Shown here: piece after piece, positions 13,723 through 48,964 of the stretch
Position numbering within the stretch: the stretch's first letter is position 1
How the letters are laid out: every line of letters starts with the position of its first letter
Virus record (IMG/VR): IMGVR_UViG_3300049793_000366
Location: 372,001 to 436,000 of that record
Length of the DNA stretch: 64,000 bases
Direction: 5' to 3' (one strand)
Program-made: the position numbers and the translations under genes
Notes under the pieces: model-generated
Database searches by the model: none
Seen by the model: the letters and a program-made list of their open reading frames with translations, nothing else
What the model was told of the DNA's origin: nothing

Positions 13723-14136
13723 ATGACATTAAAAGAGAAAATTGCCCAGGACTACATCGTTGCTTTTAAAGCAAGAGAGCCAAAGAAGAATACTTTAGGC
13801 TTCATTAAATCGGCTATCGATACTGCTGAGAAAAATGGTGGTAAATCAACAGATGAAGAAGTACTTGAAATCTTAATTAAGATGGAGAAAAACTTGAAAG
13901 ATGTTTTAGTGAATGAAGCTAAAGCTGGTGTATCATCTGATGCTACAAATGCTGAGATTGAAGTAATTCAATCTTATTTGCCTAAGAAATTATCAGAAGA
14001 TGAAATCAAGGCAGAAATTCAAAATGCTATCAATGGTGGTGCTAATAACATTGGTGCTATTATGGCTTTGTTTAAAGACAAACCAGTAGATAGAAAAGTA
14101 GTTTCAACTATTGCTAATTCAATGCTTGCTAAATAA
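13723..14136 (+). CDS. GatB/YqeY domain protein
   Basis: LKEKIAQDYIVAFKARE...EIEVIQSYLPKKLSEDEI...IGAIM. Confidence 0.85.
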   Translation: MTLKEKIAQDYIVAFKAREPKKNTLGFIKSAIDTAEKNGGKSTDEEVLEILIKMEKNLKDVLVNEAKAGVSSDATNAEIEVIQSYLPKKLSEDEIKAEIQNAINGGANNIGAIMALFKDKPVDRKVVSTIANSMLAK

Positions 14137-14144
14137 ATTATATC

Positions 14145-14519
14145 ATGGAGCTAACAACAGATAATGTTTCAAAGATTCTAAAAGATTCTTTATTCAAAGA
14201 TGGTGTGGACACCACTAACGCAGTAATTGTTGAGGGTGTGAGAGGTAAATTTGGATTTGACCCTACCCAATTAGAGAAAAATAAGCAACACATTGTAGAT
14301 ATGCTTTCCCAGCTACCAAATGAGTTTAAATCAACTGGTGGTGGCGGTTGGAGCTTTCTACAAGCTTGTATGCGAAGTGATGATGTACAGTGGGGAGACC
14401 ACACCAGCATTGATGAATTGATATGTTTAGGACTTGCAGTTGGTGAGGTATCTTTCTTAATGCCTCGTGATATGTGGTCTATGTTTCCTGGTGGAATGCC
14501 CTATTTTGCGATTAAATAA
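14145..14519 (+). CDS. Conserved-looking hypothetical protein
   Basis: GGGWSFLQAC...QWG...WSMFPGGMPY. Confidence 0.6.
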   Translation: MELTTDNVSKILKDSLFKDGVDTTNAVIVEGVRGKFGFDPTQLEKNKQHIVDMLSQLPNEFKSTGGGGWSFLQACMRSDDVQWGDHTSIDELICLGLAVGEVSFLMPRDMWSMFPGGMPYFAIK

Positions 14520-14847
14520 TGCTTTGGACTGATTATTGTTTATCAATATAAAATTGGTCACAGACGATAATCCAGCCCAAAAAGAGAATAAAATCTCAAG
14601 AATTAAGCAATTTTGAATAAAATAAATGTTAAATTAATCAATATGGTAATTATGTAACATTCAGTGGACGCGAGAGATAGAAAGGCTTCCAAGTATTTTT
14701 AGTCCAGTTTTAAACAACTATATGTTGAAAACTTAAAAAAATCCTTGATTATTGTAAAATTAGCCGTATCTTTACATCCAAGAATTTACAAATCGTAAAA
14801 GGAGAAGGTTGATGCCTATAAGTTTAACCAGAATTAAAAAAAAGAAA

Positions 14848-15783
14848 ATGAGTAAAGTAAAAGAGTCGCCAGATAAAAATGGCAACGGAAAACACGGTAA
14901 CGACAACGCTAACGGGCATCATAAAGCCGAAGGCCACTCGACTGCTGAAGCATCATCTTCATCATCAAAAACCGAAAAAGAAAAGTCACCCGCAAAACAA
15001 CATAGGAAAACAGAGGTGACTTCGAAGCTTAAAGAGCGTAAGCCAAGCTCTGATAAGTTAGGCAGTTTTTCCGTTAAGGATTTAGAATCCATGACACCAC
15101 AGCAAAGATGGCATCTTAGAAAACGTCTTGAAGCTCTAACGGGTAGCAAGAAGTCAACAAGCAAAGCCAAGGCTACAACCGGAAACGGTAAAAGAGGTCG
15201 CCCTGCTATCGGTGATGGTATGACACCACAACAAAGATGGCACCTGAAAAAGAAACAGGAAAAGGTAGCACTTCAAAAGAAGACAGGTCAGCCTGCTCCT
15301 AAAAGAGGTCGTCCTGCCGCTCCAATCAAAAGTGCCGCTGACTTAACACGTCAGAAAAGATGGCATCTTAAGCAGAAGCTTGAGAAATTGGAGAAAATGA
15401 AGAAAAAAGGCGCAATCTCTAAAGAAGTCAGAGCCGACATTCGCAACATCCGCGCATTACTTGACGAAAGCTACAAATCAGCTAAGACAGTAAAGGCTAA
15501 CAAAGCTAACAAAAGGATCTCTAATAAAGACCTTGCTTCAATGACACCTCAGAAACGTTGGTATCACAAGCACAAAGCTGACTTAGCTAAGACCAGAAAA
15601 ACAGGTAAGAAAACTACCAAAGTTCACAAGGTAACTGCTAAAGTTGCTTCTGGTAAGCGAATCTCAAACAGTGACTTAAAAACTGTTACTACTAAAAAAG
15701 TTAAAACAACTAAGAAACCAACAGCAAGGCTTTCCAACAAACAGTTGAAAAACATGAGCAAATTGGACAAAGTTTTATCTTAA
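14848..15783 (+). CDS. Highly basic nucleoid-like protein with AT-hook-like motifs and MTPQQRWH repeats (start moved to ATG 14848)
   Basis: Lys-rich; two KRGRPA motifs; four (M/L)T(P/R)Q(Q/K)RW(H/Y) repeats. Confidence 0.65.
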   Translation: MSKVKESPDKNGNGKHGNDNANGHHKAEGHSTAEASSSSSKTEKEKSPAKQHRKTEVTSKLKERKPSSDKLGSFSVKDLESMTPQQRWHLRKRLEALTGSKKSTSKAKATTGNGKRGRPAIGDGMTPQQRWHLKKKQEKVALQKKTGQPAPKRGRPAAPIKSAADLTRQKRWHLKQKLEKLEKMKKKGAISKEVRADIRNIRALLDESYKSAKTVKANKANKRISNKDLASMTPQKRWYHKHKADLAKTRKTGKKTTKVHKVTAKVASGKRISNSDLKTVTTKKVKTTKKPTARLSNKQLKNMSKLDKVLS

Positions 15784-15802
15784 TGGTAGAAACATCCATC
15801 AT

Positions 15803-15838
15803 AAAAAGAGCTATCATAATCATGGTAGCTCTTTTTTA
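15803..15838 (+). terminator. Intrinsic terminator
   Basis: aaaaagagctatca...tggtagctctttttt. Confidence 0.75.
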
Positions 15839-15848
15839 TTAAAACAAA

Positions 15849-15880
15849 TTTGGATATTAACGTATAATGTATTACATTTG
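15849..15880 (+). promoter_or_regulatory. Bacteroidota-type promoter
   Basis: TTTG 15849-15852, TACATTTG 15873-15880. Confidence 0.75.
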
Positions 15881-15911
15881 TATCAAACAATTATAAACAA
15901 ACAAAACAATT

Positions 15912-16103
15912 ATGAAAAACGGAGTAGTAAAATTCTTCAATGAAACTAAAGGTTTCGGCTTTATTAAAGCAGAAGATGGTCAAGAAATTTTTGTTCACGT
16001 AAGTGGATGTAAAGAAGAAATACAAGAAAACGACAATGTAGTTTTCGATGTACAAGAAGGAAAAAAAGGATTAAATGCGGTTAACGTAAAGTTAGCTGAC
16101 TAA
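15912..16103 (+). CDS. cspA: Cold-shock protein
   Basis: GVVKFFNETKGFGFI, IFVHVS, GKKGLNAVNV. Confidence 0.95.
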   Translation: MKNGVVKFFNETKGFGFIKAEDGQEIFVHVSGCKEEIQENDNVVFDVQEGKKGLNAVNVKLAD

Positions 16104-16116
16104 TATATACCTACCT

Positions 16117-16179
16117 ATGACTATTAAAAGAATTAAATTAGCTGATGATTGCCTAACCTGTCTAACTGTGACGGATTAG
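16117..16179 (+). CDS. Asp leader peptide MTIKRIKLADDCLTCLTVTD
   Basis: Short ORF after AATATATA, tandem GAT GAT codons, directly before a terminator and aspS. Confidence 0.75.
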   Translation: MTIKRIKLADDCLTCLTVTD

Positions 16180-16236
16180 TAATCTATTGACTATATAATT
16201 CGAAACCCAGTTAGACACGTTCTAACTGGGTTTTTT
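16159..16236 (+). promoter_or_regulatory. Attenuator (antiterminator/terminator) of aspS
   Basis: Terminator aaacccagttaga/tctaactgggttt + T tract (16203-16236); leader tgtctaactg (16159-16168) is the exact complement of cagttagaca (16208-16217). Confidence 0.8.
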
Positions 16237-16278
16237 ATTTGCACTAAAAATTATAAACTAAAAACAAAAACAATTATT

Positions 16279-17556
16279 ATGAAAAGAACAAACATCAATG
16301 AACTGAATGCCCATGTAGGTGAGACAGTTCTAATTAAAGGTTGGGTATCACAATTTAGAAAATTAAGTAAGATATCCTTTATTATTCTACGCGAGAGAAC
16401 AGGATATTGTCAAGTGATAGTACCAAAAGAAGTATTTTTCGAAACAATACATTCTGAATCAGTAGTAGAAATAGTTGGTACGGTTAAAGCTGAACCACAA
16501 TCTAAGTATAACGGTCTTGAGATTGTAGTAGAGAAGATAACTATTGTATCAAGCGCAGAAGTATTACCATTCCCAATCAGTAGAGAAGAAGGTGTACCAT
16601 TCAATACACTAAACACTTATCGACCATTGACACTGAGAAAAGAACAAGAGCGATGTATATTTAAAATACAGTCTGAAATTATTTGGGCATATAGAGAATA
16701 TCTTCGTTCACAAGGCTTCACTGAAATACAATCTACAAAACTATCTGCCGCTGGTTTAGAAGGTGGTTCAGAAATGTTTGAGATAAACTATTTTGGAGAG
16801 AAGATGTATCTAACACAAAGCCCGCAGTTCTATAAACAGATGATGGTTGGTGTATATGAACGAGTGTTTGAAGTTGGTAAAGTTTACAGAGCAGAAGGTT
16901 CTAATACAAACAAGCACTTAACAGAATTTGTTGGGTTTGAATTTGAAATGGGATTCATTGAATCAGTTGAAGAAGTAATGCAAATGGAAGAGAATGTACT
17001 TGAACACATATTCAATCATTTGAATGTAGTTTGTAAGTCTGAGCTATCACATTTATCAATTGAGTTGAAGTTTAATCCAATACCAAGAGTTACTTATTCA
17101 GAAGCTATTGAAATAATTAAACGTGAACATGGTATCACTTATGAGAAAGTAGGACTGAGTACCGAAGCTGAGAGATTGATTGGTGAATATATTCTGAAGA
17201 CACAAGGTTCAGAGTTTGTATTCATCACTAAATATCCATTATCAGAAAGACCATTCTATGCGATGCCATCACCAGAAGAAGGTATGTCTGAAACATTTGA
17301 ATTGCTTTATAAGGGGATGGAAATTACTTCTGGTGGTCAGCGCATTCATAACTATGAACAATTAGTTAAATCAATAGAAGCTAAGGGATTAAACCCAGAA
17401 GCATTTGAGAGCTACCTAATGGCATTTAAGTATGGTATGCCTACTCACGGAGGTATGGGTATCGGTGTAGAGCGAGTGCTTAAGCAAATGCTAAATTTGA
17501 ATACCGCAGAGGAAGCATCATTGATACCAAGAACTAAAGAGAGATACAGTCATTAA
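16279..17556 (+). CDS. aspS: Aspartyl-tRNA synthetase, short archaeal-type
   Basis: OB-fold N-terminus, QSPQFYKQ, YRAE, EITSGGQRIH, GMPTHGGMGIGVER. QSPQ favours AspRS over AsnRS. Confidence 0.88.
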   Translation: MKRTNINELNAHVGETVLIKGWVSQFRKLSKISFIILRERTGYCQVIVPKEVFFETIHSESVVEIVGTVKAEPQSKYNGLEIVVEKITIVSSAEVLPFPISREEGVPFNTLNTYRPLTLRKEQERCIFKIQSEIIWAYREYLRSQGFTEIQSTKLSAAGLEGGSEMFEINYFGEKMYLTQSPQFYKQMMVGVYERVFEVGKVYRAEGSNTNKHLTEFVGFEFEMGFIESVEEVMQMEENVLEHIFNHLNVVCKSELSHLSIELKFNPIPRVTYSEAIEIIKREHGITYEKVGLSTEAERLIGEYILKTQGSEFVFITKYPLSERPFYAMPSPEEGMSETFELLYKGMEITSGGQRIHNYEQLVKSIEAKGLNPEAFESYLMAFKYGMPTHGGMGIGVERVLKQMLNLNTAEEASLIPRTKERYSH

Positions 17557-17591
17557 TTGCAAATTAGGATTTTATTCCGTATATTTGGACA

Positions 17592-17984
17592 ATGACTGTA
17601 TCTGATTGTAATTTAATTGTACATCCTATTGGTGAGAGTTTCAGAATGTTTAAAAGAAACTCTCACCTTAATATAGATGATGTCGTGTTTTACTTAGATG
17701 GTTCACCAATTGGTGAATATCGAATGGTTGGTCCTTATAGAGTCGTAAAACATCACTCTGACTTAACAGATGCGAAAACTGGATATAAAATAACAAAGTT
17801 TGAATGTTACGATATAGAAAGAGGTGGGTTTGATTATTTAAATGTAGATAAAACATTCACTATGGGTCCAGAGATACCCAAAACTCACATTTATAAAAAA
17901 TATACATTCGCTTACAAACCATCTATTGATTTAGTAAGATGGTATAAGCTACATGAACTAACTGAGAATGGATCTGATTTATAA
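17592..17984 (+). CDS. Hypothetical protein
   Basis: Follows a TATATTTG promoter; first of a coupled gene run. Confidence 0.55.
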   Translation: MTVSDCNLIVHPIGESFRMFKRNSHLNIDDVVFYLDGSPIGEYRMVGPYRVVKHHSDLTDAKTGYKITKFECYDIERGGFDYLNVDKTFTMGPEIPKTHIYKKYTFAYKPSIDLVRWYKLHELTENGSDL

Positions 17985-18357
17985 AATAGAAGATTGGTAT
18001 ATTTATGATAATATGTTTAACCTAAAGTGTAGGTTTGTAGCTTCTATTGTACCAAAAGATTTTAGAATAACAGATTTATATCACATTATAAAATATAACG
18101 AGTCTATTGTTATTGATGATGTTAATACGAATGATTTGATATATGAACTTTTAGAAGGTACACATCAACCAAATTATAATGCTTATTCTATGAAGTGGAA
18201 TGAGACTAAGTTTGGTATTGATTTGACTAAATACAATACATTCTACATACAACCAATAGGTGAAGATGGTAAACTACAAGCTTATACATCATTCAATATT
18301 TGTAAGGTGAGTAGAGCTAAGGCTATGCGTGAGTATCAATTAAATAAATTAGTATGA
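17968..18357 (+). CDS. Hypothetical protein
   Basis: Coupled ORF; C-terminal REYQLNKLV. Confidence 0.55.
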   Translation: MDLIYKIEDWYIYDNMFNLKCRFVASIVPKDFRITDLYHIIKYNESIVIDDVNTNDLIYELLEGTHQPNYNAYSMKWNETKFGIDLTKYNTFYIQPIGEDGKLQAYTSFNICKVSRAKAMREYQLNKLV

Positions 18358-18605
18358 TATCATTGAAGGAAAATATAGATAAGGCAAAGAATCTTATCAA
18401 CGCAATTGATAGTTTGACAAATCCTGATGTGTATTTAAACACACGTACACGATATGCAAATGAGAAACAGCTTAGAAAAACTATGAAGAATTTTAGACGT
18501 TTATCTGTTGTTATTGATAAGCAAGTCAAAGAGGGTTCTCGTAATAAGTTTAAGGAATCTACTAGTCAAACACGCAGTAGAAAATTAAATACAATCTTTA
18601 AATAA
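18354..18605 (+). CDS. Hypothetical protein
   Basis: ATGA overlap with the upstream gene. Confidence 0.5.
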   Translation: MISLKENIDKAKNLINAIDSLTNPDVYLNTRTRYANEKQLRKTMKNFRRLSVVIDKQVKEGSRNKFKESTSQTRSRKLNTIFK

Positions 18606-18904
18606 TGTACGTATATAGTAAACGAACCATAGAGTATGTATTTAACGAGCGCAATGCACCAAAAGATGTTTGGTGTAATCTTAAGGGTACACTGAGACCT
18701 TTTGTAAATTTTAGTGTTCTACATAATGTTAGGTTCTACGGATATTTTGACCTGACAGAATATCAAATTACAGTTGACTACACTGAATATAATGAACGCA
18801 AATCAATTAGTGACTCAAAAGATACCTATGGTATCATTAAGACTATCACACCATGTATAAAACACATGGAGAGAGAAACTAATATAAATAACATCTTGAA
18901 ATGA
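18605..18904 (+). CDS. Hypothetical protein
   Basis: Coupled ORF; C-terminal RETNINNIL. Confidence 0.55.
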   Translation: MYVYSKRTIEYVFNERNAPKDVWCNLKGTLRPFVNFSVLHNVRFYGYFDLTEYQITVDYTEYNERKSISDSKDTYGIIKTITPCIKHMERETNINNILK

Positions 18905-19185
18905 ATATAATAAATCACACAACCACTGTATCTACGGAAGATATGCTTGATATAATATCAGACATCGATAAGAGAATTGGTGTTGAATTTTATGTTAGAA
19001 AAATAACTTCAATTGAATATGTTGAAAAGGCTGATTCGGGTATAACTACCTGGAAAAAACCAGAACATTTATTAGTTTCATATACTTGGTATAGTGATAA
19101 GATTAAAGATGGTAATGGTCACTGTGAAGTATATGAACCATTTACGAGAATAAGAGAAATAAAATTAAAGGCTATTACTCAATGA
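18901..19185 (+). CDS. Hypothetical protein
   Basis: Coupled ORF; C-terminal REIKLKAI. Confidence 0.55.
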   Translation: MNIINHTTTVSTEDMLDIISDIDKRIGVEFYVRKITSIEYVEKADSGITTWKKPEHLLVSYTWYSDKIKDGNGHCEVYEPFTRIREIKLKAITQ

Positions 19186-19517
19186 ACGTTTTATTTGTCT
19201 GTTCTGCTAATAAGCAAAGGTCAAGAACTGCTGAAGACCACTTCACATCTAAGTATAGTGATATAAAATTTCTCAGTGCTGGTACTAATATAAAAATTTG
19301 TAATCAAGAAGGAACTACACCACTCACAGAAGATTTATTAGAATGGGCTGATGTAGTTTACGTGATGGAAAACAAACATCTGAATCAAATAAAACAACAC
19401 ACTGGTTCGAAGTATAATAAGAAGATTAAGGTATTAAATATACCGGATATTTATAAGTACGGTGAAACTAAACTCATTGATATACTGGAAGATAAGATAA
19501 ATTTTGAAAATAATTGA
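19182..19517 (+). CDS. Low-molecular-weight protein tyrosine phosphatase family protein
   Basis: VLFVCSANKQRSRTAE P-loop; LNIPDIY. Confidence 0.88.
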   Translation: MNVLFVCSANKQRSRTAEDHFTSKYSDIKFLSAGTNIKICNQEGTTPLTEDLLEWADVVYVMENKHLNQIKQHTGSKYNKKIKVLNIPDIYKYGETKLIDILEDKINFENN

Positions 19518-19524
19518 AAATAAA

Positions 19525-19607
19525 TTTGCAAATTGAAAACTTTCACCTTACATTTGTATAAAATTAATAAGAAAAATAAAAAGGGAGCGAAAGCTTTATA
19601 ATATATA
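19525..19607 (+). promoter_or_regulatory. Dual promoter cassette (host-type promoter plus AATATATA)
   Basis: TTTG 19525, TACATTTG 19549-19556, AATATATA 19600-19607; near-identical copy at 47332-47414. Confidence 0.75.
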
Positions 19608-19612
19608 ACAAC

Positions 19613-19690
19613 ATGAAAACATTAATAAACATACAAGTTCAACCCGATCCGCAAGTGTCGTCTGCTGGCTGTATGTTTCATATGAGTTGA
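19613..19690 (+). CDS. Gln/Val/Pro/Asp leader peptide MKTLINIQVQPDPQVSSAGCMFHMS
   Basis: Short ORF between promoter and terminator; core QVQPDPQV. Confidence 0.75.
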   Translation: MKTLINIQVQPDPQVSSAGCMFHMS

Positions 19691-19714
19691 AAATAACTAT
19701 TTCAAATAATATCG

Positions 19715-19749
19715 AAAACCCTCAGTTAGCAATGACTGAGGGTTTTTTT
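19715..19749 (+). terminator. Attenuator terminator before the Asp/Pro tRNA-proS operon
   Basis: aaaaccctcagt/actgagggtttt + T tract; leader tgctggctg can pair with cagttagca. Confidence 0.8.
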
Positions 19750-19759
19750 ATGCCTAAAC

Positions 19760-19832
19760 GGAGCCATGGTTGAATGGTTACAATGCCACCCTGTCACGGT
19801 GAGCGATGCCGGTTCGAATCCGGTTGGTTCCG
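19760..19832 (+). tRNA. tRNA-Asp(GUC)
   Basis: Cloverleaf GGAGCCA/TGGTTCC, loop CTGTCAC, G73. Confidence 0.92.
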
Positions 19833-19910
19833 CAAAGTATCATAATCCAATCAAGAGTGTGGAGGATGAAGAGACCAATGCTTCTGTGGTTCTTATGATA
19901 CTAAAAATAC

Positions 19911-19984
19911 GACTCTGTAGCTCAGTTGGTTAGAGTGCCTGTTTGTCAAGCAGGAGGTCGCCGGTTCGAACCCGGTCATTGTCG
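19911..19984 (+). tRNA. tRNA-Asp(GUC), atypical body with two acceptor mismatches
   Basis: GACTCTG/CATTGTC, anticodon arm CCTGT-TTGTCAA-GCAGG. Confidence 0.75.
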
Positions 19985-19989
19985 CAAAA

Positions 19990-20063
19990 GGATCGTTAGT
20001 AGAGTTGGTTACAATGTCGCCCTGTCACGGCGAAGGTCACGGGTTCGAGTCCCGTACGGTCCG
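19990..20063 (+). tRNA. tRNA-Asp(GUC)
   Basis: GGATCGT/ACGGTCC, TCGCC-CTGTCAC-GGCGA. Confidence 0.92.
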
Positions 20064-20068
20064 CAAAT

Positions 20069-20139
20069 GTTTCGGTAGTTTAACTGGCTAGAATGGCCCC
20101 ATTCGGGGGTTGGTAGAGGTTCGAATCCTCTCTGAAACG
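20069..20139 (+). tRNA. tRNA-like RNA with a 5-nt anticodon loop (ATTCG); identity unassigned
   Basis: Intact acceptor GTTTCGG/CTGAAAC and T arm AGAGG-TTCGAAT-CCTCT; anticodon arm GCCCC-ATTCG-GGGGT. Confidence 0.55.
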
Positions 20140-20142
20140 CAA

Positions 20143-20393
20143 GAAAGTAGATGAGGTCATAGTGAGAGTGTACACTACTGTTATCTGGATGATAGCACTT
20201 CTGTATTAAAAAGACTCCGCTCTGAGTGGTTAGGTACCGTGTAGTATCTTCGCGTGTTCTCTGCTCGACAAAAGCAATGCCCAGTTGAAAGACTGTAAAA
20301 AAGCTGAGTCAGTGTATAAAGGGGAACGGGATATTAAAAGGTGTTAAACCTAAACTAAGTGGCTACACCGCACGGCTCAGCTCTCTACACTTC
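20143..20393 (+). ncRNA. Unidentified structured RNA, about 250 nt, between tRNAs
   Basis: Terminal pairing GAAAGTAGATGAG/CTCTCTACACTTC; GCTGAGTC/GGCTCAGC; several local hairpins; no ORF. Confidence 0.55.
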
Positions 20394-20466
20394 GGGATAT
20401 AGCGTAGTCCGGTATCGCGCCTGCTTTGGGAGCAGGAGGTCGTCAGTTCGAATCTGGCTATCCCGA
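20393..20466 (+). tRNA. tRNA-Pro(UGG)
   Basis: CGGGATA/TATCCCG, CCTGC-TTTGGGA-GCAGG. Confidence 0.92.
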
Positions 20467-20516
20467 CTGGAGCTTAGTTGTCAGTAGACTCGCGTTGGAA
20501 AGAGGAATTGTCAAAA

Positions 20517-20590
20517 CGAGATATAGCGTAGCCCGGTATCGCGCTTGCTTTGGGAGCAAGAGGCCGCAGGTTCGAATCCTGCTATCTCGA
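20517..20590 (+). tRNA. tRNA-Pro(UGG)
   Basis: CGAGATA/TATCTCG, CTTGC-TTTGGGA-GCAAG. Confidence 0.92.
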
Positions 20591-20594
20591 CAAA

Positions 20595-20813
20595 ATGAAA
20601 GTAGTTTGTGTAAATAATGGAAAAGAAACTAGAAGCGTCAATAATGACGTTACGGTTAATGATGTGTATGATGTTATATATGAACACACATCAGATTATT
20701 ACTTAACTAATGATAATAAAAAGAGACTCATGTACCCCAAAGATATGTTTATTACTTTGGATGAATTTAAAAAAGAAATTAGAAATAAAAAATTATTAAA
20801 TATAGGGTTATGA
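20595..20813 (+). CDS. Small hypothetical protein (true start ATG 20595; the ORF-track start lies in tRNA-Pro)
   Basis: MKVVCVNN...RNKKLLNIGL. Confidence 0.55.
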   Translation: MKVVCVNNGKETRSVNNDVTVNDVYDVIYEHTSDYYLTNDNKKRLMYPKDMFITLDEFKKEIRNKKLLNIGL

Positions 20814-21916
20814 GATTATCAGAAACAAAAATTTATAATATGTCAAGAGTTGGGAAAGATATTCTCTCAACATCTGAGTTGCTTGAGAAAGCAGGCTACA
20901 TTAAACAAGTTCAATCAGGATTATTTGTTCAGATGAATTTAATGAAACGTGTAGTGAACAACATTGAACGAATTGTAAAAGAAGAACTTGAAAAAATAAG
21001 TTGCTTAGAGATTGGATTAAACCAATTACAGAGCGCAGAAATTTGGAAACAAACAGGAAGATACGAAACATACGGATCTGAAATGTTTAAGTTGAAAGAC
21101 CGTTCAGATAAAGAAATGGTATTCACTGGTACGAATGAAGAGCTTGTAACCTTAGTGGCTAAGAATTATGTGAAGTCATATAGAGATTTATCTTTTACAT
21201 TCTATCAGATAAATAATAAGTTCCGTGATGAGATTAGATGCAACACTGGATTGATTAGATGTAAAGAGTTCTCAATGATGGATGCGTATTCATTTCACGA
21301 ATCAAAAGAACACTTACAAGCTTACTATGATAAGATGAGAGAATGTTACGTTAGAATCTTTGACAGACTTGGTTTGAAATACAGAATAGAATCTACTGAC
21401 TCAGGTGAGATTGGTGGTTCAGTATCAGAAGAGTTTGTAGTAACAACAAGTGATGGTGAAATAGAAGTTGGTCACATCTTCCAATTAGATACAAAGTATT
21501 CATCTAAGATGGAAGCAAGATTTGATGATAGAGAAGGTAAGAGTCAAGACATTGTTATGGGTTGTTACGGAATAGGTATCACTCGATTAGCACAAGTGTT
21601 AGCTGATGTTGGTAGAAGTGGTAACAACTTTAACTTTAGTGATGAAGTATCTGCTTATAAGTATGGTGTTGTAATCGCGAATGTTAATGACGAGAAACAA
21701 AAAGAAATTGGAGAAAAGATATACAAAAATTTGGTAGCTCAAGGATTATCCGTATATTTGGATGACCGAAACATAAGAATAGGTGAAAAGCTAAATGAAA
21801 TAGATGCTCTCGGTATTGCGAATAAAATATTAGTAGGTAAAAACATTGAAGAAAATATTTACGAAAAGAAAAAACTTTCCAGTGAGAATTGGATAAAAGA
21901 AGAAATAACATTATAA
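20810..21916 (+). CDS. proS: Prolyl-tRNA synthetase lacking the INS editing domain
   Basis: FRDEIR..GLIRCKEF.MMDAYSF; GEIGGSVSEEF joins IEVGHIFQL almost directly; MGCYGIGITR; C-terminal anticodon-binding domain. Confidence 0.92.
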   Translation: MRLSETKIYNMSRVGKDILSTSELLEKAGYIKQVQSGLFVQMNLMKRVVNNIERIVKEELEKISCLEIGLNQLQSAEIWKQTGRYETYGSEMFKLKDRSDKEMVFTGTNEELVTLVAKNYVKSYRDLSFTFYQINNKFRDEIRCNTGLIRCKEFSMMDAYSFHESKEHLQAYYDKMRECYVRIFDRLGLKYRIESTDSGEIGGSVSEEFVVTTSDGEIEVGHIFQLDTKYSSKMEARFDDREGKSQDIVMGCYGIGITRLAQVLADVGRSGNNFNFSDEVSAYKYGVVIANVNDEKQKEIGEKIYKNLVAQGLSVYLDDRNIRIGEKLNEIDALGIANKILVGKNIEENIYEKKKLSSENWIKEEITL

Positions 21917-21927
21917 TATATACAGCT

Positions 21928-21999
21928 ATGAACAATTTAGTACAACAAGTCCAGCAACAACAAATCAATCTGATGATTGACTGGACTCGTATTGGCTAA
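21928..21999 (+). CDS. Gln leader peptide MNNLVQQVQQQQINLMIDWTRIG
   Basis: Six Gln codons (5 CAA, 1 CAG) ahead of a terminator, four tRNA-Gln genes and glnS. Confidence 0.88.
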   Translation: MNNLVQQVQQQQINLMIDWTRIG

Positions 22000-22022
22000 A
22001 ATGTAATTAGTTCCAAATTTCG

Positions 22023-22057
22023 AAAACCCGTTAATCTGTGTGATTAACGGGTTTTTT
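22023..22057 (+). terminator. Attenuator terminator of the Gln operon
   Basis: aaaacccgttaatc/gattaacgggtttt + T tract; leader gattgac pairs with gttaatc. Confidence 0.85.
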
Positions 22058-22070
22058 GTTTGCCTAAAAT

Positions 22071-22151
22071 TGTCTGGTGGTGAAATGGCAGCCACATCCG
22101 CCTTTGAAGCGGATGCCGAAAGGCGTGTAGGTTCGACCCCTACCCAGACAG
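22071..22151 (+). tRNA. tRNA-Gln(UUG) with a long variable arm (type II body)
   Basis: TGTCTGG/CCAGACA, G73, TCCGC-CTTTGAA-GCGGA, variable arm GCC-GAAA-GGC. Confidence 0.8.
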
Positions 22152-22157
22152 CAACAT

Positions 22158-22230
22158 TGCGGAATCGTCTAACGGTTAGGATAACACCCTCTGAAGGTGT
22201 CTGGTGTGGGTTCGAATCCTACTTCCGCAA
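22158..22230 (+). tRNA. tRNA-Gln(CUG)
   Basis: TGCGGAA/TTCCGCA, ACACC-CTCTGAA-GGTGT. Confidence 0.88.
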
Positions 22231-22235
22231 CAAAT

Positions 22236-22309
22236 TGTTCTATGGTGTAACTGGTTAACACGTCCGACTTTGACTCGGAAGACTCTAGGTTCGAATCCTA
22301 GTAGAACAG
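22236..22309 (+). tRNA. tRNA-Gln(UUG)
   Basis: TGTTCTA/TAGAACA, TCCGA-CTTTGAC-TCGGA. Confidence 0.9.
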
Positions 22310-22318
22310 CTAAAATAT

Positions 22319-22389
22319 TCCTCTTTGGTCTAATGGTATGACGTTGGGTTTTGGTCCCAAAGGTGGTGGTTCGATTCCATCAAGAGGGA
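22319..22389 (+). tRNA. tRNA-Gln(UUG)
   Basis: TCCTCTT/AAGAGGG, TTGGG-TTTTGGT-CCCAA. Confidence 0.88.
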
Positions 22390-22420
22390 CAACAAATAGT
22401 AATAATTAAATACAAACAAT

Positions 22421-24040
22421 ATGAATTTCATTGAAGACAAAATAACAGAAAGGGGAATAATTGAAAGTTTTAAACTTCGTTTTCCACCAGAAAATAATGG
22501 CTTTTTACATATCGGTCATGCGAAATCTATATGCCTTAACTTTGGTTTAGCTGAAAAATATAACAGACCATGTAATTTAAGATTCGATGATACTAATCCA
22601 TCAAATGAATCAAATGAATTCACAGAGGCTATTAAGAGAGACATAGCATGGTTGGGTTATAGACCAGCTAATATTCATCACACATCAGACTACTTCGCAT
22701 TCCTATATGATTGTGCTAAGACATTAATCAGAAAAGGATTAGCATACGTTGATGATTCAACATCAGAAGAGATTGCGGCACTTAAAGGTACAACAACTTT
22801 AGCTGGTAGACCATCGCCTTATTACTCAAGAACAATCGAAGAGAATCTTGATTTGTTCGAGAGAATGAAGAACGGTGAATTCAATGAAGGTTCTAAAATA
22901 TTAAGAGCTAAGATTGACATGGCTTCTCCTAATATGATTTTGAGAGATCCTGTTTTATATCGTATCATCAACAAGACACACCACCACGTTGGTGATGCTT
23001 GGAAGATTTATCCAATGTATGACTTCGCTCACCCATTGTCTGACTTCATTGAAGGTATCACTGATTCACTTTGCACTTTAGAGTTCGAAGTACACAGACC
23101 ATTATATATGTGGGTACTTGAGAATTGTGATTTGAATGGTACATTACCAGAAGAAACAGAGTTCGCTCGTTTGAACATTGACTACACAGTTATGTCAAAG
23201 AGAAAGCTTAAGAGATTAGTTGAAGAGGGATTTGTTTCTGGTTGGGATGATCCAAGACTTCCAACAATTTCAGGTTTGAGAAGAAGAGGATATACACCAG
23301 CATCTATTAAAGATTTCTGTGATAGAATTGGTGTTACTCGTAAAGAGTCTGTTGTATCACACTTGTTACTTGAAGAGTGTTTAAGAAATGATTTAAACAA
23401 AGTAGCTAATCGTGTGATGGGTATAATGGATCCTGTTAAGTTAGTTATTACCAATTGGGATAACGGTACTGAAATGGTTGAGATTGAAAACAACCCAGAA
23501 GATGAAAGTGCTGGTAAGAGAATGGTTCCATTCAGTGGTGAAATATACATTGAACGTGAAGACTTCAGAGAAGAAGCTGATAACAAGTTTTTCCGATTGA
23601 AGCCAGGTTGTGAAGTAAGATTGAAGGGTGCTTGTGTAATCATGGCTAATGAAATTATCAAAGATTCAAATGGTAACATCATTGAAATCAGATGTACTTA
23701 TGACCCTAACAGTCGGTCAGGTATGACACTTGATAGAAAAGTTAAGGGTACTATTCACTGGGTATCAGTTGAACACGCTATTAAAGGAGAAGTTAAAGAG
23801 TACAGTAACTTATTCAATGTGGCTAATCCTGATGAGTTAGAAGACTTCGTAGAAGGATTGAACAAAGAGTCATTGATAGTTAATACGAATGCTTACTTTG
23901 AACCAGAAGCTTTGAATTGTTCAATCGATAAGCCAGTTCAAATGGTAAGAAAAGGTTACTATGTGATGGATAAAGATTCAACAACTAATTGCTTGATTTT
24001 CAATAAAACAGTTAATTTAAAAGAAGACCGTAATAAATGA
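22421..24040 (+). CDS. glnS: Glutaminyl-tRNA synthetase
   Basis: RFPPENNGFLHIGHAK, RFDDTNP, VMSKRKL, VKGTIHWVS. Confidence 0.95.
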   Translation: MNFIEDKITERGIIESFKLRFPPENNGFLHIGHAKSICLNFGLAEKYNRPCNLRFDDTNPSNESNEFTEAIKRDIAWLGYRPANIHHTSDYFAFLYDCAKTLIRKGLAYVDDSTSEEIAALKGTTTLAGRPSPYYSRTIEENLDLFERMKNGEFNEGSKILRAKIDMASPNMILRDPVLYRIINKTHHHVGDAWKIYPMYDFAHPLSDFIEGITDSLCTLEFEVHRPLYMWVLENCDLNGTLPEETEFARLNIDYTVMSKRKLKRLVEEGFVSGWDDPRLPTISGLRRRGYTPASIKDFCDRIGVTRKESVVSHLLLEECLRNDLNKVANRVMGIMDPVKLVITNWDNGTEMVEIENNPEDESAGKRMVPFSGEIYIEREDFREEADNKFFRLKPGCEVRLKGACVIMANEIIKDSNGNIIEIRCTYDPNSRSGMTLDRKVKGTIHWVSVEHAIKGEVKEYSNLFNVANPDELEDFVEGLNKESLIVNTNAYFEPEALNCSIDKPVQMVRKGYYVMDKDSTTNCLIFNKTVNLKEDRNK

Positions 24041-24543
24041 GTAATATATTAGATAAAATGTTTGATATGAATTTATCAGACTGTTTAGCAGCGTTAGTTA
24101 TCATAATAACATTCCTTACATTTATTATTAAAAAAACAAGGATAGGTTTTTTAAATTTTTGTTTATTTCTTTATAGAAAGGTTAAGTCTGTAATAGTTTT
24201 TATTCGTAGAAGTATAATATTATTTAGACTTCATAGGCTATTATCAAATTTGGATATTAATAGTGAATTTATAATTGATAAGGTTAAAATTAAAAAACAA
24301 ACACTCACAATATATAATGGTAAAAACAACATTGATATACATATTTCTAATAGTGACTTAGAAATGTTTTCTAAATATAAATTAAGTAAGTGGAAAAAAT
24401 CACTTCCACTTAGTATTTCACTATATATAGTAGATGGTATATTATTTAGAAATGAAGATGTATCTAAATTTACCAGAGAACATAGGCTATCTAAATATTT
24501 ACATGATTATATAAATGGAATAAAAACACCAAGTATTAATTAG
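24037..24543 (+). CDS. Hypothetical protein with N-terminal hydrophobic segment
   Basis: ATGA overlap with glnS. Confidence 0.5.
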   Translation: MSNILDKMFDMNLSDCLAALVIIITFLTFIIKKTRIGFLNFCLFLYRKVKSVIVFIRRSIILFRLHRLLSNLDINSEFIIDKVKIKKQTLTIYNGKNNIDIHISNSDLEMFSKYKLSKWKKSLPLSISLYIVDGILFRNEDVSKFTREHRLSKYLHDYINGIKTPSIN

Positions 24544-24544
24544 A

Positions 24545-24601
24545 ATGAAACACATTAACTCAAATAACGTAGTCGTAGTCAACAGGAATCCCGTCTGTTA
24601 G
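24545..24601 (+). CDS. Val leader peptide MKHINSNNVVVVNRNPVC
   Basis: Four consecutive Val codons (GTA GTC GTA GTC) ahead of a terminator and valS. Confidence 0.88.
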   Translation: MKHINSNNVVVVNRNPVC

Positions 24602-24623
24602 GCTACGCTATATCTATTATACT

Positions 24624-24655
24624 AACCCATCAGACAATCTCTGATGGGTTTTTTT
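24624..24655 (+). terminator. Attenuator terminator of valS
   Basis: aacccatcag/ctgatgggtt + T tract; leader gtctg pairs with cagac. Confidence 0.82.
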
Positions 24656-24694
24656 ATACCAAAAAATTACTAAAAAATTAAAACTAAAAATATT

Positions 24695-26224
24695 ATGAAA
24701 ACGAAATACACACCCGAAATTGAAAATGAAATCAACCAAGAATGGTTAGAAAATAAAACATACAAATCAACACCTGATGAGAGAGAAGCATTCACTATCA
24801 TCATGCCACCACCAAACATCACTGGTATACTTCACCTTGGACACATCTTGAATAACACAATACAAGATATTTTCATTAGAAGAAAGAAACAACTTGGTTA
24901 CAACACTTGTTGGATTCCTGGTATCGACCATGCTTCAATCGCAACAGAAGCTAAAATCATTCACTGGTTGAAAGAACAGAACATCGAGAAGAATGATCTG
25001 ACTAAAGAACAATTTCTTGAGTATGCTTGGCAATGGAAAGATAAATATGGTAACATAATCATCGACCAACTTAAACGATGTGGCTTTGCTTGTGATTGGG
25101 ATAGACTTACATTCACAATGGATAAACATCACTCTGATAGAATCTATGAAATGTATGACAGACTTAAAGCTGGCAACATCATATATCGCGGTACTAAAAC
25201 AATGGCTTATGACCCATTAGCTAAAACATACTTATCAGACTCGGAAACGTTTGAGAAGAATGGTAAACTATTCTCTGAGAGAACAGGCGCTAAGATTGAA
25301 ATGAAAGACACTGAGCAGATATTTATCGATATGAATAAGATTGCTCAACCCGCACTTGATAGTATCGGAGAACGCATTAAAATGATTCCTGATACAGCAT
25401 TCCCATCTTATAAGAATTGGTTTGATAACTTACAAGATTGGTGTATCTCAAGACAGTTAACATGGGGTCACTCTATACCAGATGATGAAGGAACTTTTGA
25501 TACTTGGTTCTCTTCTTGGTTATGTGCTATCACAGCATTTAAATCACAAGAAGAAATAGATTACTATATGCCATCAGACTTCATCATTACTGGTCAAGAC
25601 ATCGCTTTCTTTTGGATTGCTAAGATGATAATGGCGAATGATTACTGGGATAAATCTATACCGTTTCATAACATCTACTTCACTGGTATTATGAGAGATA
25701 AAGACGGTAAGAAGTTTGCGAAGCAGTTTAATAATTCACCAGACATTATGAATTTGATGGAAGAGCATGGCGCTGACTCATTGCGATTCTCAACTATCAT
25801 TAACCATCACGCTGGTATGGATTCTAAATGGACTATGGATCAATTGTTACAGGGTAAAAGATTCTGTAATAAGATTTGGAATATCAACAAGCTAATGTCT
25901 TCGTGGCAACCATCTGATATAGAAATGTCAGACAAACAAAGAGAATCATTGAATACTTGGAAGATGCAGTTTGCTTCTGCTAAGAATAGCTACAAGCAAC
26001 TATTTGATGATGAGCTTAGATTCTCAGAAGCTTTGATATTAACCTACAATCTTATTTGGGAAGACTTTTCATCTGGGTTACTTGAAGCCATAAAGCCTGA
26101 ACAGGGCATTTGGCCAAATTTAAACCGTGAGCTGTATGATTGTTTAATGAGTGATTTCAGAGAATTGATGCTAATGTTGGAGCCATTTATGCCATTCATA
26201 AGCAATTATATGTTGAATAAGTAA
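24695..26224 (+). CDS. valS: Valyl-tRNA synthetase, 509 aa, CP1 editing domain deleted
   Basis: PPPNITGILHLGH, PGIDHASIAT, DWCISRQLTWGH, FDTWFSS; KMSKS equivalent is KFAKQ. Confidence 0.9.
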   Translation: MKTKYTPEIENEINQEWLENKTYKSTPDEREAFTIIMPPPNITGILHLGHILNNTIQDIFIRRKKQLGYNTCWIPGIDHASIATEAKIIHWLKEQNIEKNDLTKEQFLEYAWQWKDKYGNIIIDQLKRCGFACDWDRLTFTMDKHHSDRIYEMYDRLKAGNIIYRGTKTMAYDPLAKTYLSDSETFEKNGKLFSERTGAKIEMKDTEQIFIDMNKIAQPALDSIGERIKMIPDTAFPSYKNWFDNLQDWCISRQLTWGHSIPDDEGTFDTWFSSWLCAITAFKSQEEIDYYMPSDFIITGQDIAFFWIAKMIMANDYWDKSIPFHNIYFTGIMRDKDGKKFAKQFNNSPDIMNLMEEHGADSLRFSTIINHHAGMDSKWTMDQLLQGKRFCNKIWNINKLMSSWQPSDIEMSDKQRESLNTWKMQFASAKNSYKQLFDDELRFSEALILTYNLIWEDFSSGLLEAIKPEQGIWPNLNRELYDCLMSDFRELMLMLEPFMPFISNYMLNK

Positions 26225-35697: not shown

Positions 35698-35771
35698 TGA
35701 GGGGTAGCTCAGTGGTAAGAGCGCCGGGACGGAAAACCCGGAGGTCGTTGGTTCGAATCTAACCCCCTCTA
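35698..35771 (+). tRNA. Initiator-like tRNA body with an 8-nt anticodon loop ACGGAAAA
   Basis: U1-U72 mismatch, GAGGGG/CCCCTC, CCGGG/CCCGG stem, AGGTC variable loop. Confidence 0.6.
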
Positions 35772-35779
35772 CAAAGAAT

Positions 35780-48170: not shown

Positions 48171-48403
48171 CTAAAAAATAAAATTAAAATGAACAATTGA
48201 ATTAATTGAATAGGTTAGCTGATATACAAAGTGTTAATTGTATTCTCAGTAATGTATGCCTTACAAAACAAAAACATGAAATGTCGTATCTACGAAGATG
48301 ATTATGAAACATCGGTATATGACTTCAACAACAACATACGAAGAAGAAGTATGTTGACAAACATAACAAACTATTACTCAAACGTAGATGAGTAATAGTA
48401 GAT

Positions 48404-48645: not shown

Positions 48646-48766
48646 CACTGAAAGGTATAAAGGTTGCAAACTTTATATTGAGTAGTAGCGTTGCTGACCG
48701 CTTAATAAAGAATGGCAATTGTTTCAATAACGTTTATGAAATAATTGTTTAGTTCAGCGAACATTT

Positions 48767-48859
48767 GCGAAGATAACAGCACTGGCACGTTCAGCCAGCC
48801 CACGTAAAAATATGCTGTATTGGATAGTGGTGAGTATGGTTCGAATCCTACTCTTCGCA
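48767..48859 (+). ncRNA. tRNA-like RNA with intact acceptor and T arm but remodelled core
   Basis: GCGAAGA/TCTTCGC, T arm GTA[T]GG-TTCGAAT-CCTAC; ACAGC/GCTGT encloses CTGGC-ACGTTCA-GCCAG. Confidence 0.5.
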
Positions 48860-48870
48860 CAAAATAAAAT

Positions 48871-48943: not shown

Positions 48944-48964
48944 CAAAAAATAAAAAAGAATTAA

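What the first reader, a model, noticed from the sequence alone, without database searches (positions are those of the whole stretch)
20143..20393. Unassigned 250-nt structured RNA embedded in the Asp/Pro tRNA array
It fills the space between two tRNA genes exactly and has paired termini, an internal 8-bp GCTGAGTC/GGCTCAGC helix, several hairpins and a possible pseudoknot (GTTCTCT with GGGGAAC). It would be co-induced by the Asp/Pro attenuator.
Basis: seen in the sequence. Interest (0 to 1): 0.6.

Follow-up and report, generated by a model that had tools for sequence, protein, structure and literature searches.

The report
New structured RNA in phage tRNA array
A 252-base stretch between two tRNA genes of a half-megabase phage is a conserved, folded, non-coding RNA matching no Rfam family; it is probably cut out of the tRNA precursor as a free RNA, and its function is unknown.

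Summary
Window 20141-20392 (+) fills the gap between an odd tRNA-like gene (20069-20140) and tRNA-Pro (20393-20467) exactly. It has no ORF in any frame and is 43% G+C, against about 30% in coding DNA and 20% in intergenic DNA.

No Rfam 15 family matches it, even at E<=10. Two related huge phages carry it in the same slot (L013, L015), and contigs of two more sequencing runs (X6, X8) hold its 3' core.

The three full copies fold on their own into one architecture:
- a closing stem (P1);
- a hypervariable hairpin (P2), rebuilt by compensatory changes and almost deleted in X6;
- a long conserved rod (P3-P8) tipped by a GNRA loop (GAAA/GUAA).

The GUUCUCU/GGGGAAC pairing shows two compensatory changes, but it is nested, not a pseudoknot. 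All five X6/X8 substitutions at paired positions keep the pair.

Three more distant huge-phage genomes searched whole (two rated complete) and six further ProRS or LMWPc neighbourhoods lack the element.

Best reading: a new, lineage-restricted RNA family, co-transcribed with the tRNAs and released by tRNA processing. It resembles the tRNA-island RNAs GOLLD and ROOL in setting only. Expression is untested.

The parts
20141..20392 (+). The element: a 252-nt conserved structured non-coding RNA, a candidate new family
   Evidence: Lies exactly between two tRNA genes. No ORF. 43% G+C against about 30% coding and 20% intergenic. No Rfam hit at E<=10. Homologs at L013:3074-3328 and L015:3656-3908. 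Consensus fold with covariation.
20147..20155 (+). P1 5' strand (closing stem). Pairs with 20381-20388.
   Evidence: GUAGA/UCUAC plus GAG/CUC, kept in all three copies. L015 makes a continuous 7-bp GUAGAGA/UCUCUAC. The X8 change C20388U gives a G-U pair.
20161..20221 (+). P2: conserved 4-bp base (20161-20164 with 20218-20221) carrying a hypervariable hairpin (20166-20217)
   Evidence: The sequence is almost randomised between the three copies, yet each folds into a long hairpin. 11 pairs in helices 2-4 have changes on both sides. In run X6, 20167-20214 is replaced by 12 nt.
20222..20238 (+). P3/P4 5' strands. CUGAGU (20222-20227) pairs with GCUCAG 20375-20380. UAGGU and ACC pair with 20348-20352 and 20340-20342.
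   Evidence: Invariant 20-nt block in all three copies. Predicted in each copy's own MFE fold. No covariation, so these helices rest on thermodynamics alone.
20242..20249 (+). P5 5' strand. Pairs with 20329-20336.
   Evidence: U-A to G-C compensatory change in L015, and G-U to G-C in L013 and L015. The X6/X8 changes A20333G and U20334C keep pairing. There is one G.G mismatch in L013.
20255..20269 (+). Pairs with 20308-20313 and 20321-20328 (GGGGAAC).
   Evidence: Two compensatory C-G to U-A changes plus one U-G to C-G in L015. 100% of cells are paired. X8's C20259U gives U-G.
20273..20305 (+). P7 (20273-20275 with 20303-20305) and the terminal hairpin P8 (20282-20286 with 20291-20295), with a GNRA tetraloop at 20287-20290
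   Evidence: The loop is GAAA in the window and GUAA in L013, L015 and X8. The closing U-G becomes C-G in L015. The flanking A-rich internal loops are invariant.
20359..20371 (+). P9 side hairpin (GUGG / CCGC, loop CUACA)
   Evidence: Predicted in the window and L013 folds; L015's own fold lacks it. X6's U20360C turns U-G into C-G. L015 has one G.A mismatch.
20069..20140 (+). Upstream flank: a tRNA-like gene with a non-canonical anticodon loop. Its 3' processing would define the element's 5' end.
   Evidence: Rfam tRNA 46 bits. ARAGORN calls it Glu(ttc) here but '???' with a 2-nt or 4-nt anticodon in L013 and L015. By my reading of A3 the loop is 5, 6 or 8 nt, while the acceptor stem shows compensatory changes.
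20393..20467 (+). Downstream flank: tRNA-Pro(UGG). RNase P cleavage at its 5' end would define the element's 3' end.
   Evidence: tRNA-Pro follows the element in all three full copies and in the X6 and X8 contigs.
19613..19751 (+). Upstream leader ORF (19613-19690) and terminator hairpin (19715-19751), heading the transcription unit that would contain the element
   Evidence: Conserved in five huge phages, with compensatory changes in the terminator stem. Weak sub-threshold resemblance to amino-acid operon leaders. No promoter-like site between it and the second tRNA-Pro, and no terminator-like site as far as the ProRS stop.
20810..21916 (+). Short phage-type prolyl-tRNA synthetase gene downstream on the same strand
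   Evidence: PF00587 and PF03129. Used as the anchor to find homologous loci.

Best explanation
Window 20141-20392 encodes a stable structured non-coding RNA of a previously undescribed family. It is confined to a narrow clade of huge phages, probably phages of Flavobacteriia.

Biogenesis (inferred): it is transcribed on the + strand as part of the polycistronic Asp/Pro tRNA precursor that starts behind the conserved leader peptide and terminator. 3' processing of the upstream tRNA-like unit sets its 5' end. Host RNase P cleavage at the 5' end of tRNA-Pro sets its 3' end. This leaves a roughly 250-nt molecule whose ends are locked in the closing stem P1.

Shape: the RNA folds into a long rod (P3-P8) capped by a GNRA tetraloop, with invariant A-rich internal loops, one dispensable variable hairpin (P2) and a small side hairpin (P9).

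Function (inferred): I take it to act in trans as a free RNA, most likely as a protein- or RNA-binding scaffold within the phage's translation and tRNA programme. This is the same setting as the tRNA-island RNAs GOLLD and ROOL.

Shown: conservation, strand, architecture and absence of coding potential. Inferred: transcription, the processing steps and trans action.
For: - Exact fit between two tRNA genes, with variable A/U-rich linkers of 4-6 nt outside a conserved closing stem.
- No ORF in six frames, and substitutions are not three-periodic.
- G+C of 42-45% stands out from 30% coding and 20% intergenic DNA, as it does for the tRNAs.
- Homologs sit in the same slot in L013 (87% identity) and L015 (about 80%). 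Neutral sequence, such as the distal part of P2, is randomised between them, so the 5' 26 nt and the 3' 175 nt are under selection.
- Consensus fold: 94% of cells are paired against 35-45% in slid controls, 14 pairs change on both sides, and 0 of 500 shuffles reach the observed covariation.
- Each copy's own MFE fold gives the same architecture.
- Independent data not used to build the model: at 11 variant sites reported for the X6 and X8 contigs, 5 of 5 at paired positions keep pairing and 6 lie in unpaired positions. X6 trims the variable hairpin to 12 nt.
- About ten G-U pairs exist only on the + strand, and the minus strand folds no better than shuffles.
- No promoter-like site from the leader terminator to the second tRNA-Pro, and no terminator-like site as far as ProRS.
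- The tRNA genes lack encoded CCA. The phage encodes a CCA-adding-type nucleotidyltransferase and no RNase P RNA.
- The same phage carries a GOLLD RNA next to a tRNA. GOLLD and ROOL are described as lying near phage tRNA islands (bioRxiv 10.1101/2024.12.08.627333).
Against: - There is no expression evidence. All 24 runs listed as holding the DNA are DNA runs.
- Only three full sequences are available, so covariation has little statistical power. P3, P4 and P7 are invariant and rest on energy alone.
- The single-sequence z-score is only -1.25.
- One G.G mismatch (P5, L013), one G.A mismatch (P9, L015) and one A.C mismatch (P1, L015, rescued by a register shift) occur.
- Three relatives searched whole (two rated complete) and six further ProRS or LMWPc neighbourhoods lack the element. 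It is therefore dispensable for this phage group.
- Trans action and any partner are pure inference.
Confidence: 0.55

Rival explanations
1. Cis-acting leader. The structure is not a free RNA but a folded 5' leader of tRNA-Pro and the ProRS message. It would tune RNase P processing, transcript stability or expression of the downstream tRNA-Pro/ProRS unit.
For: It always lies immediately upstream of tRNA-Pro, only 4-6 nt from the RNase P site. In L015, tRNA-Pro is followed after 18 nt by the ProRS start, so the element, tRNA-Pro and ProRS form one unit. No terminator-like site lies between them.
Against: - Relatives with the same tRNA-Pro/ProRS arrangement do without it (L016, L017, L035, L037).
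- The closing stem makes it a self-contained domain.
- The linker to tRNA-Pro varies in length and sequence.
Confidence: 0.2
2. A highly diverged member of a known RNA class that Rfam models cannot recognise. Candidates are T-box, tmRNA, RNase P RNA, 6S, SRP RNA, Y RNA, a group I intron or a self-cleaving ribozyme.
For: The context is rich in aaRS genes, where T-boxes would be expected. The invariant block GAGUGGUUAGGUACCGUG loosely recalls the T-box core (GGUGGUACCGCG, recalled from memory) and contains UGGU, which could pair with an ACCA 3' end.
Against: - cmscan against all 4227 Rfam families with lax filters on 331 nt returns nothing but the flanking tRNA, in both the window and L015.
- No terminator/antiterminator or SD-sequestering hairpin follows; a tRNA gene follows directly.
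- The would-be Stem I (P2) is hypervariable and nearly deleted in X6.
- The phage has a normal tmRNA elsewhere.
- The phage has no Ro60/TROVE and no RtcB.
Confidence: 0.07
3. Decayed tRNA genes or a neutral spacer: the remains of about three tRNA genes, or filler DNA, with no function of its own.
For: 252 nt is roughly three tRNA lengths. These phages carry many aberrant or undetected tRNA-like units, for example L004:3845-3925, the window 48647-48870 spacer and the odd tRNA next door.
Against: - There is no tRNA-model hit at E<=10 inside the element and no T-loop motif.
- Block conservation is strong while the distal part of P2 is randomised.
- Compensatory changes and pairing-preserving variants support a non-tRNA long-range architecture.
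Confidence: 0.05
4. A DNA-level or selfish element: a small non-autonomous mobile insertion with inverted ends, or a protein-binding DNA site, that entered the array in one lineage.
For: It is lineage-restricted in an otherwise conserved array. The terminal sequences are complementary. Homing endonuclease genes (HNH in L013, LAGLIDADG in L035) have invaded the same array.
Against: - It is single-copy in the 508-kb genome.
- No target-site duplication or endonuclease gene travels with it.
- About ten G-U pairs work only in + strand RNA, and the minus strand does not fold.
- Selection acts on long-range RNA helices.
Confidence: 0.05

Closest known systems
GOLLD RNA (Rfam RF02032) and ROOL RNA
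   Same: Phage-encoded, ORF-free, elaborately folded RNAs of unknown function that lie in or beside tRNA islands (bioRxiv 10.1101/2024.12.08.627333). A bona fide GOLLD (232 bits) sits next to a tRNA in this same window at 60855-61269.
   Different: The element is three times smaller or more (252 nt, against GOLLD members that often exceed 800 nt). It has no sequence or structure match to either model. It is predicted to be a simple rod with two side hairpins rather than multi-pseudoknotted. It is known from only about five phage variants. Oligomerisation is untested.
Phage T4 stable RNAs 'species 1 and 2' (rnaC, rnaD) of the T4 tRNA cluster (from my own knowledge; not verified in a paper read here)
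   Same: Small non-tRNA RNAs encoded within a phage tRNA gene cluster, made from the same precursor by the tRNA-processing machinery, with function still unknown.
   Different: The T4 species are about 120-140 nt and confined to T4-like phages. No model of them was available to compare, so any relationship is untested.
MALAT1/mascRNA and MEN-beta: tRNA-like 3'-end processing
   Same: An adjacent tRNA-shaped unit recruits RNase P to define the end of a non-coding RNA. The odd tRNA-like unit in L015 even gives a weak sub-threshold mascRNA-model hit (17.6 bits).
   Different: That system is eukaryotic and unrelated in sequence. Here both ends would be set by tRNA units. This is an analogy of mechanism only.
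T-box riboswitch (RF00230)
   Same: A structured RNA of about 200-250 nt upstream of an aminoacyl-tRNA synthetase gene. An invariant block contains UGGU and an ACCG-like core.
   Different: There is no model match, no conserved Stem I, and no terminator or sequestrator. A tRNA gene lies between the element and ProRS.

Membership tests
Any Rfam 15 family (4227 models, including tmRNA, RNase P, 6S, SRP, T-box, group I/II introns, self-cleaving ribozymes, GOLLD, ROOL, HEARO, raiA, YrlA) | A covariance-model match at or near the family's gathering score | tested here: not met
   There is no match inside 20141-20392 at gathering thresholds. There is none at E<=10 with lax filters on 1.2 kb, on 331 nt, or on the L015 homolog.
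T-box riboswitch | A conserved Stem I with specifier loop and distal T-loop platform | tested here: not met
   The only 5' hairpin (P2) is hypervariable in sequence and length, and is cut to 12 nt in run X6.
T-box riboswitch | Mutually exclusive terminator/antiterminator (or SD sequestrator) directly upstream of the regulated ORF | tested here: not met
   No terminator-like site lies in or after the element. The 3' end is the closing stem, followed 4 nt later by a tRNA gene.
tRNA / tRNA pseudogene cluster | Cloverleaf with T-loop, detectable by the tRNA covariance model or ARAGORN | tested here: not met
   ARAGORN and RF00005 find nothing within 20141-20392, even at E<=10.
tmRNA | A tRNA-like domain formed by the 5' and 3' ends, plus a tag-peptide reading frame | tested here: not met
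   ARAGORN finds the phage's tmRNA elsewhere (genome 59956-60348, minus strand) and none here. There is no ORF.
Y RNA / YrlA (Ro60-associated) | Co-occurrence with a Ro60 (TROVE) gene, and a Ro-binding terminal stem with a tRNA-like module | tested here: not met
   There is no TROVE domain in the 508-kb record, while the controls are positive. The YrlA model gives only 16 bits, on the neighbouring tRNAs.
Small protein-coding gene | An open reading frame conserved among homologs | tested here: not met
   Stops occur in all six frames. Indels and non-periodic substitutions separate the homologs.
Phage tRNA-island-associated structured ncRNA (descriptive kind: GOLLD, ROOL, T4 species 1/2) | Phage-encoded, ORF-free, lies inside or beside a tRNA array on the same strand | tested here: met
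Phage tRNA-island-associated structured ncRNA (descriptive kind) | Secondary structure conserved through compensatory change | tested here: met
   Only three full sequences plus two partial variant lists are available, so power is limited.
Phage tRNA-island-associated structured ncRNA (descriptive kind) | Accumulates as a discrete RNA during infection | not testable with these tools
   No RNA run holds this DNA. The contigs laid are from DNA runs.

The most novel reading that the evidence does not exclude
The element, possibly together with the conserved non-decoding tRNA-like unit in front of it, is a new functional RNA class. It could be a ribozyme, a self-assembling RNA, or a specific decoy or scaffold for a host tRNA- or translation-directed factor such as an anticodon nuclease or another defence protein. 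Huge phages would deploy it from their tRNA arrays to control host translation or to escape tRNA-targeting immunity.
Probability: 0.15. Interest if true: 0.75.

Novelty: new variant of a known kind. Interest (0 to 1): 0.5.

Why it matters
Huge phages carry large tRNA arrays and aminoacyl-tRNA synthetase genes. The RNAs known to sit in such arrays (GOLLD, ROOL, the T4 stable RNAs) remain without a function.

A third, much smaller and simpler RNA in the same setting would be easier to study. This one has a clear closing stem, a dispensable hairpin, a GNRA-capped rod and invariant A-rich loops. At 250 nt it suits probing, pull-downs and cryo-EM.

Its presence or absence among very close relatives offers a natural comparison. 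It also shows that 'spacers' in phage tRNA arrays should not be taken as filler. This array holds two conserved non-tRNA RNAs and a non-decoding tRNA-like unit.

Tried and rejected
- BLAST of the element against the three first relatives (G001, G002, LR745206.1) gave only chance words.
- Exact-block scans gave no homolog. I used five different conserved or window-specific blocks across viral contigs, metagenome contigs and genome contigs. The five matches (L018-L022) share only the 18- or 19-mer and are chance.
- The ProRS profile found only the same two huge-phage records in viral contigs.
- Covariance model R1 found nothing beyond the three source sequences. It was run over four whole phage records and 19+4 loci.
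- I tried to fetch the X6 and X8 contigs through neighbouring proteins and failed. The LMWPc contig L034 ends before the array. L023 starts after the element. P0348 lies on a contig of the same length as the X8 contig (2797 nt), but it is an unrelated tRNA-rich contig.
The records behind L013, L015 and L017 are not held.
- The spacers of similar size in L017 and L002 are unrelated: a small ORF, or an undetected tRNA. The 92-nt spacer in LR745206.1 is another tRNA-like unit.
- I considered and dropped Ro60/Y RNA, RtcB-linked RNA and a phage RNase P RNA, as well as T-box, tmRNA, tRNA remnants and a small peptide gene (see the membership tests).
- I looked for a GAAA/11-nt receptor pair and for a loop-loop pseudoknot (UGUAG with CUACA). 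Neither is conserved in L013 or L015, by inspection.

Full report
**Where the window lies**

The window is bases 372001-436000 of a 507,910-bp IMG/VR virus record. The record carries 61 tRNA genes and a tmRNA. Within the window, 39 tRNA genes lie in several same-strand arrays, interleaved with aminoacyl-tRNA synthetase genes and a GOLLD RNA.

Around the finding the order is:
- a class IIb synthetase (16279-17556);
- small genes;
- a low-molecular-weight phosphatase (19182-19517);
- a short leader ORF and terminator (19613-19751);
- tRNA-Asp x3;
- an odd tRNA-like unit (20069-20140);
- the element;
- tRNA-Pro x2;
- a 72-aa ORF;
- ProRS (20810-21916);
- tRNA-Gln x4;
- GlnRS.

**Checking the observation**

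The unassigned stretch is 20141-20392, 252 nt, and it is bounded exactly by the two tRNA genes. All six frames contain stops. G+C is 42-45%, against about 30% in neighbouring genes and about 20% in true intergenic DNA. That makes it tRNA-like in composition.

Rfam 15 gives nothing inside it at gathering score. It also gives nothing at E<=10, whether 1.2 kb or only 331 nt are searched.

The + strand folds to -68 kcal/mol, but the z-score is only -1.25. The minus strand gives z = +0.48. Folding energy alone is therefore not convincing, and the case had to be made comparatively.

**Finding homologs**

BLAST against the first three related huge phages found nothing. Laying contigs of public runs on the region gave the first lead. 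A soil run (X6) and an aquatic run (X8) hold relatives in which 20215/20217-20392 is conserved. X6 replaces 20167-20214 by 12 nt. X8 replaces 20069-20216 by 146 unlike letters.

I then used ProRS as an anchor and fetched the neighbourhoods of its closest relatives. Two carry the element in the same slot, between an odd tRNA-like unit and tRNA-Pro(UGG):
- L013:3074-3328 (ProRS 96% identical, element 87%);
- L015:3656-3908, on a 709-kb contig (ProRS 85%, element about 80%).

The element is absent from:
- the next relative, L016 (ProRS 82%);
- L017, L035-L038 and L039;
- the whole records G001, G002 (both rated complete) and LR745206.1.

This was tested both by BLAST and by a covariance model built from the three copies.

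Exact scans with five sequence blocks over the viral, metagenome and genome collections returned only chance hits. The RNA is therefore real but restricted to a narrow lineage.

**Structure**

The alignment shows three zones:
- a conserved 5' segment of 26 nt;
- a segment of about 50 nt that is essentially randomised between copies;
- a 175-nt 3' core that is 88-95% identical.

RNAalifold and each copy's own minimum-energy fold give the same architecture:

| Helix | Position (window) | Notes |
|---|---|---|
| P1 | 20147-20155 with 20381-20388 | closes the molecule |
| P2 | base 20161-20164 with 20218-20221 | carries the variable hairpin |
| P3-P8 | 20222-20380 | a long rod |
| P8 loop | 20287-20290 | GNRA tetraloop: GAAA here, GUAA in L013, L015 and X8 |
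| P9 | 20359-20371 | small side hairpin |

Pair counts are as follows:
- 94% of cells are standard pairs, against 35-45% when partners are slid by 1-3 columns.
- 14 pairs have changes on both sides.
- No shuffle of 500 reaches the observed covariation score.

The changes concentrate in P2, which is rebuilt from different sequence in each phage. They also occur in P5 (U-A to G-C) and in P6 (two C-G to U-A, one U-G to C-G). P3, P4 and P7 never vary, so they rest on energy alone.

An independent check uses the X6 and X8 variants, which played no part in building the model. Of the 11 variant sites listed for the core, five lie at paired positions, and all five keep a standard pair (C119U, A193G, U194C, U220C, C248U in element numbering). 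The other six fall in loops or linkers. The table omits some variants, so this list is incomplete.

About ten G-U pairs fix the functional strand as +, the strand of the tRNAs.

The GTTCTCT/GGGGAAC pairing is the best-supported helix (P6), but it is nested, not a pseudoknot. The 8-bp GCTGAGTC/GGCTCAGC helix competes with P3 for the same 3' strand. It is 4.4-12.4 kcal/mol worse in every copy and is interrupted by a G-to-U change in L015. I do not see a conserved switch.

**How it most likely works**

No promoter-like site lies between the conserved leader terminator (19715-19751) and the second tRNA-Pro. No terminator-like site lies between it and the ProRS stop.

The leader ORF and its terminator are conserved in five huge phages, including ones that lack the element. 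The terminator stem shows compensatory changes, and the peptides are rich in Pro, Gln and Asp codons. This is inference.

None of the tRNA genes in this array encodes CCA. The phage has a CCA-adding-type nucleotidyltransferase and no RNase P RNA of its own. From established tRNA biology, two cuts would follow. Endonucleolytic 3' processing of the upstream tRNA-like unit would free the 5' end. Host RNase P cleavage at tRNA-Pro +1 would free the 3' end. The result is a 252-nt RNA whose ends are protected by P1.

The linkers outside P1 vary in length and sequence, as expected for a self-contained domain punctuated by tRNAs.

I cannot assign a function. The invariant A-rich internal loops, the GNRA cap and the dispensable P2 point to a molecule that is recognised in trans by a protein or another RNA, rather than to a cis switch. 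The cis-leader alternative for tRNA-Pro/ProRS remains open at about 0.2.

**Comparison with known systems**

In setting, the element works like the phage tRNA-island RNAs GOLLD and ROOL, and like the T4 tRNA-cluster stable RNAs (the latter from my own knowledge). In end formation it resembles the MALAT1/mascRNA arrangement. It is a member of none of these.

It fails the tests for the following:
- T-box;
- tRNA or tRNA remnant;
- tmRNA;
- Y RNA;
- small protein gene;
- every Rfam model.

No Ro60, RtcB or RNase P RNA is encoded by the phage. A 2023 survey of more than 10,000 candidate viral structured RNAs (PMC10690425) could not be checked for this motif. Its few homologs make inclusion there unlikely.

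**Verdict**

This is a genuine, selected, + strand structured RNA of a new family in a known kind of location. It is narrowly distributed and untested for expression, and its function is unknown.

Confidence:
- that it is a real structured RNA: about 0.85;
- in the full biogenesis-plus-trans-action account: 0.55.

Interest is moderate (0.5). Candidate structured RNAs are many and the support here is shallow. But the tRNA-array setting in a GOLLD-bearing huge phage, the clean architecture and the neighbouring non-decoding tRNA-like unit make it a tractable lead.

Noticed in passing
window 60855-61269 (+), with tRNA at 61277-61350 and tRNA-Lys at 59987-60061: A full-length match to GOLLD RNA (RF02032, 232 bits, E=1.4e-64) lies directly upstream of a tRNA. 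The 794 nt between tRNA-Lys and the match may be GOLLD's variable 5' region.
   Followed up: no
window 19834-19910 (+): The 77-nt spacer between the first two tRNA-Asp genes is almost invariant in the three phages. It folds into a 10-bp-stem hairpin (z = -2.37), and L013 and L015 show a G-C to A-U compensatory change at its base. It is a second unassigned small RNA in the same array.
   Followed up: partly
window 19613-19751 (+); L013:2369-2610, L015:3045-3275, L004:3040-3278, L016:1000-1240: A leader ORF plus an intrinsic terminator is conserved in five huge phages. The peptides are rich in Pro, Gln and Asp codons (for example QPDP here and PQPQDQDP in LR745206.1), the amino acids of the tRNAs and synthetases downstream. 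The terminator stem shows compensatory changes. It looks like a classical attenuator heading a phage tRNA/aaRS operon. There are sub-threshold Rfam hits to His, Phe and PyrR leaders.
   Followed up: partly
window 20069-20140 (+); L013:3001-3073; L015:3580-3655: A tRNA-shaped unit has conserved D and T arms and compensatory acceptor-stem changes. Its anticodon loop has a different length in each phage (5, 6 or 8 nt by my reading). It is probably non-decoding. LR745206.1 has a comparable odd tRNA at L004:3770-3843.
   Followed up: partly
window 13723-26224 (+): A translation island holds YqeY, a class IIb synthetase (D/K/N type), ProRS, GlnRS and a class I (I/L/M/V type) synthetase. ProRS and GlnRS are each preceded by arrays of their cognate tRNAs.
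   Followed up: partly
window 19182-19517 (+): The low-molecular-weight phosphatase gene has homologs of 67-72% identity in named Flavobacteriaceae (Autumnicola, Gillisia, Algibacter, Lacinutrix, Formosa, Winogradskyella). This hints at a Flavobacteriia host.
   Followed up: no
window 35698-35772 (+); genome 121630-121702; genome 59956-60348 (-): The record has a tRNA with a 4-nt anticodon (ggaa), a CUA-anticodon (amber-reading) tRNA that ARAGORN calls Pyl, and a tmRNA with tag AKSKTTATQVEELEIA.
   Followed up: no
window 48172-48403, 48647-48870, 48945-49161 (+): Three other spacers of about 220 nt lie in the Glu/Tyr/Gly/Ile/Ala array. Two hold small ORFs (39-54 aa and 62 aa, the latter basic) and fold well (z about -3.2 to -3.4). 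The third ends in a tRNA-like T arm that ARAGORN misses.
   Followed up: partly
L013:3458-4033; L035:9547-9993: Homing-endonuclease genes (HNH in L013, LAGLIDADG in L035) are inserted between the Pro/Asp tRNA array and ProRS in relatives. The window has a 72-aa DUF6501-like ORF and an extra tRNA-Pro there instead.
   Followed up: no
whole record (G000): IMG/VR classes the 507,910-bp record as a provirus. But the identical ProRS and phosphatase proteins are on record from a 711,805-bp contig, so the virus record may be a trimmed part of a larger phage contig.
   Followed up: no
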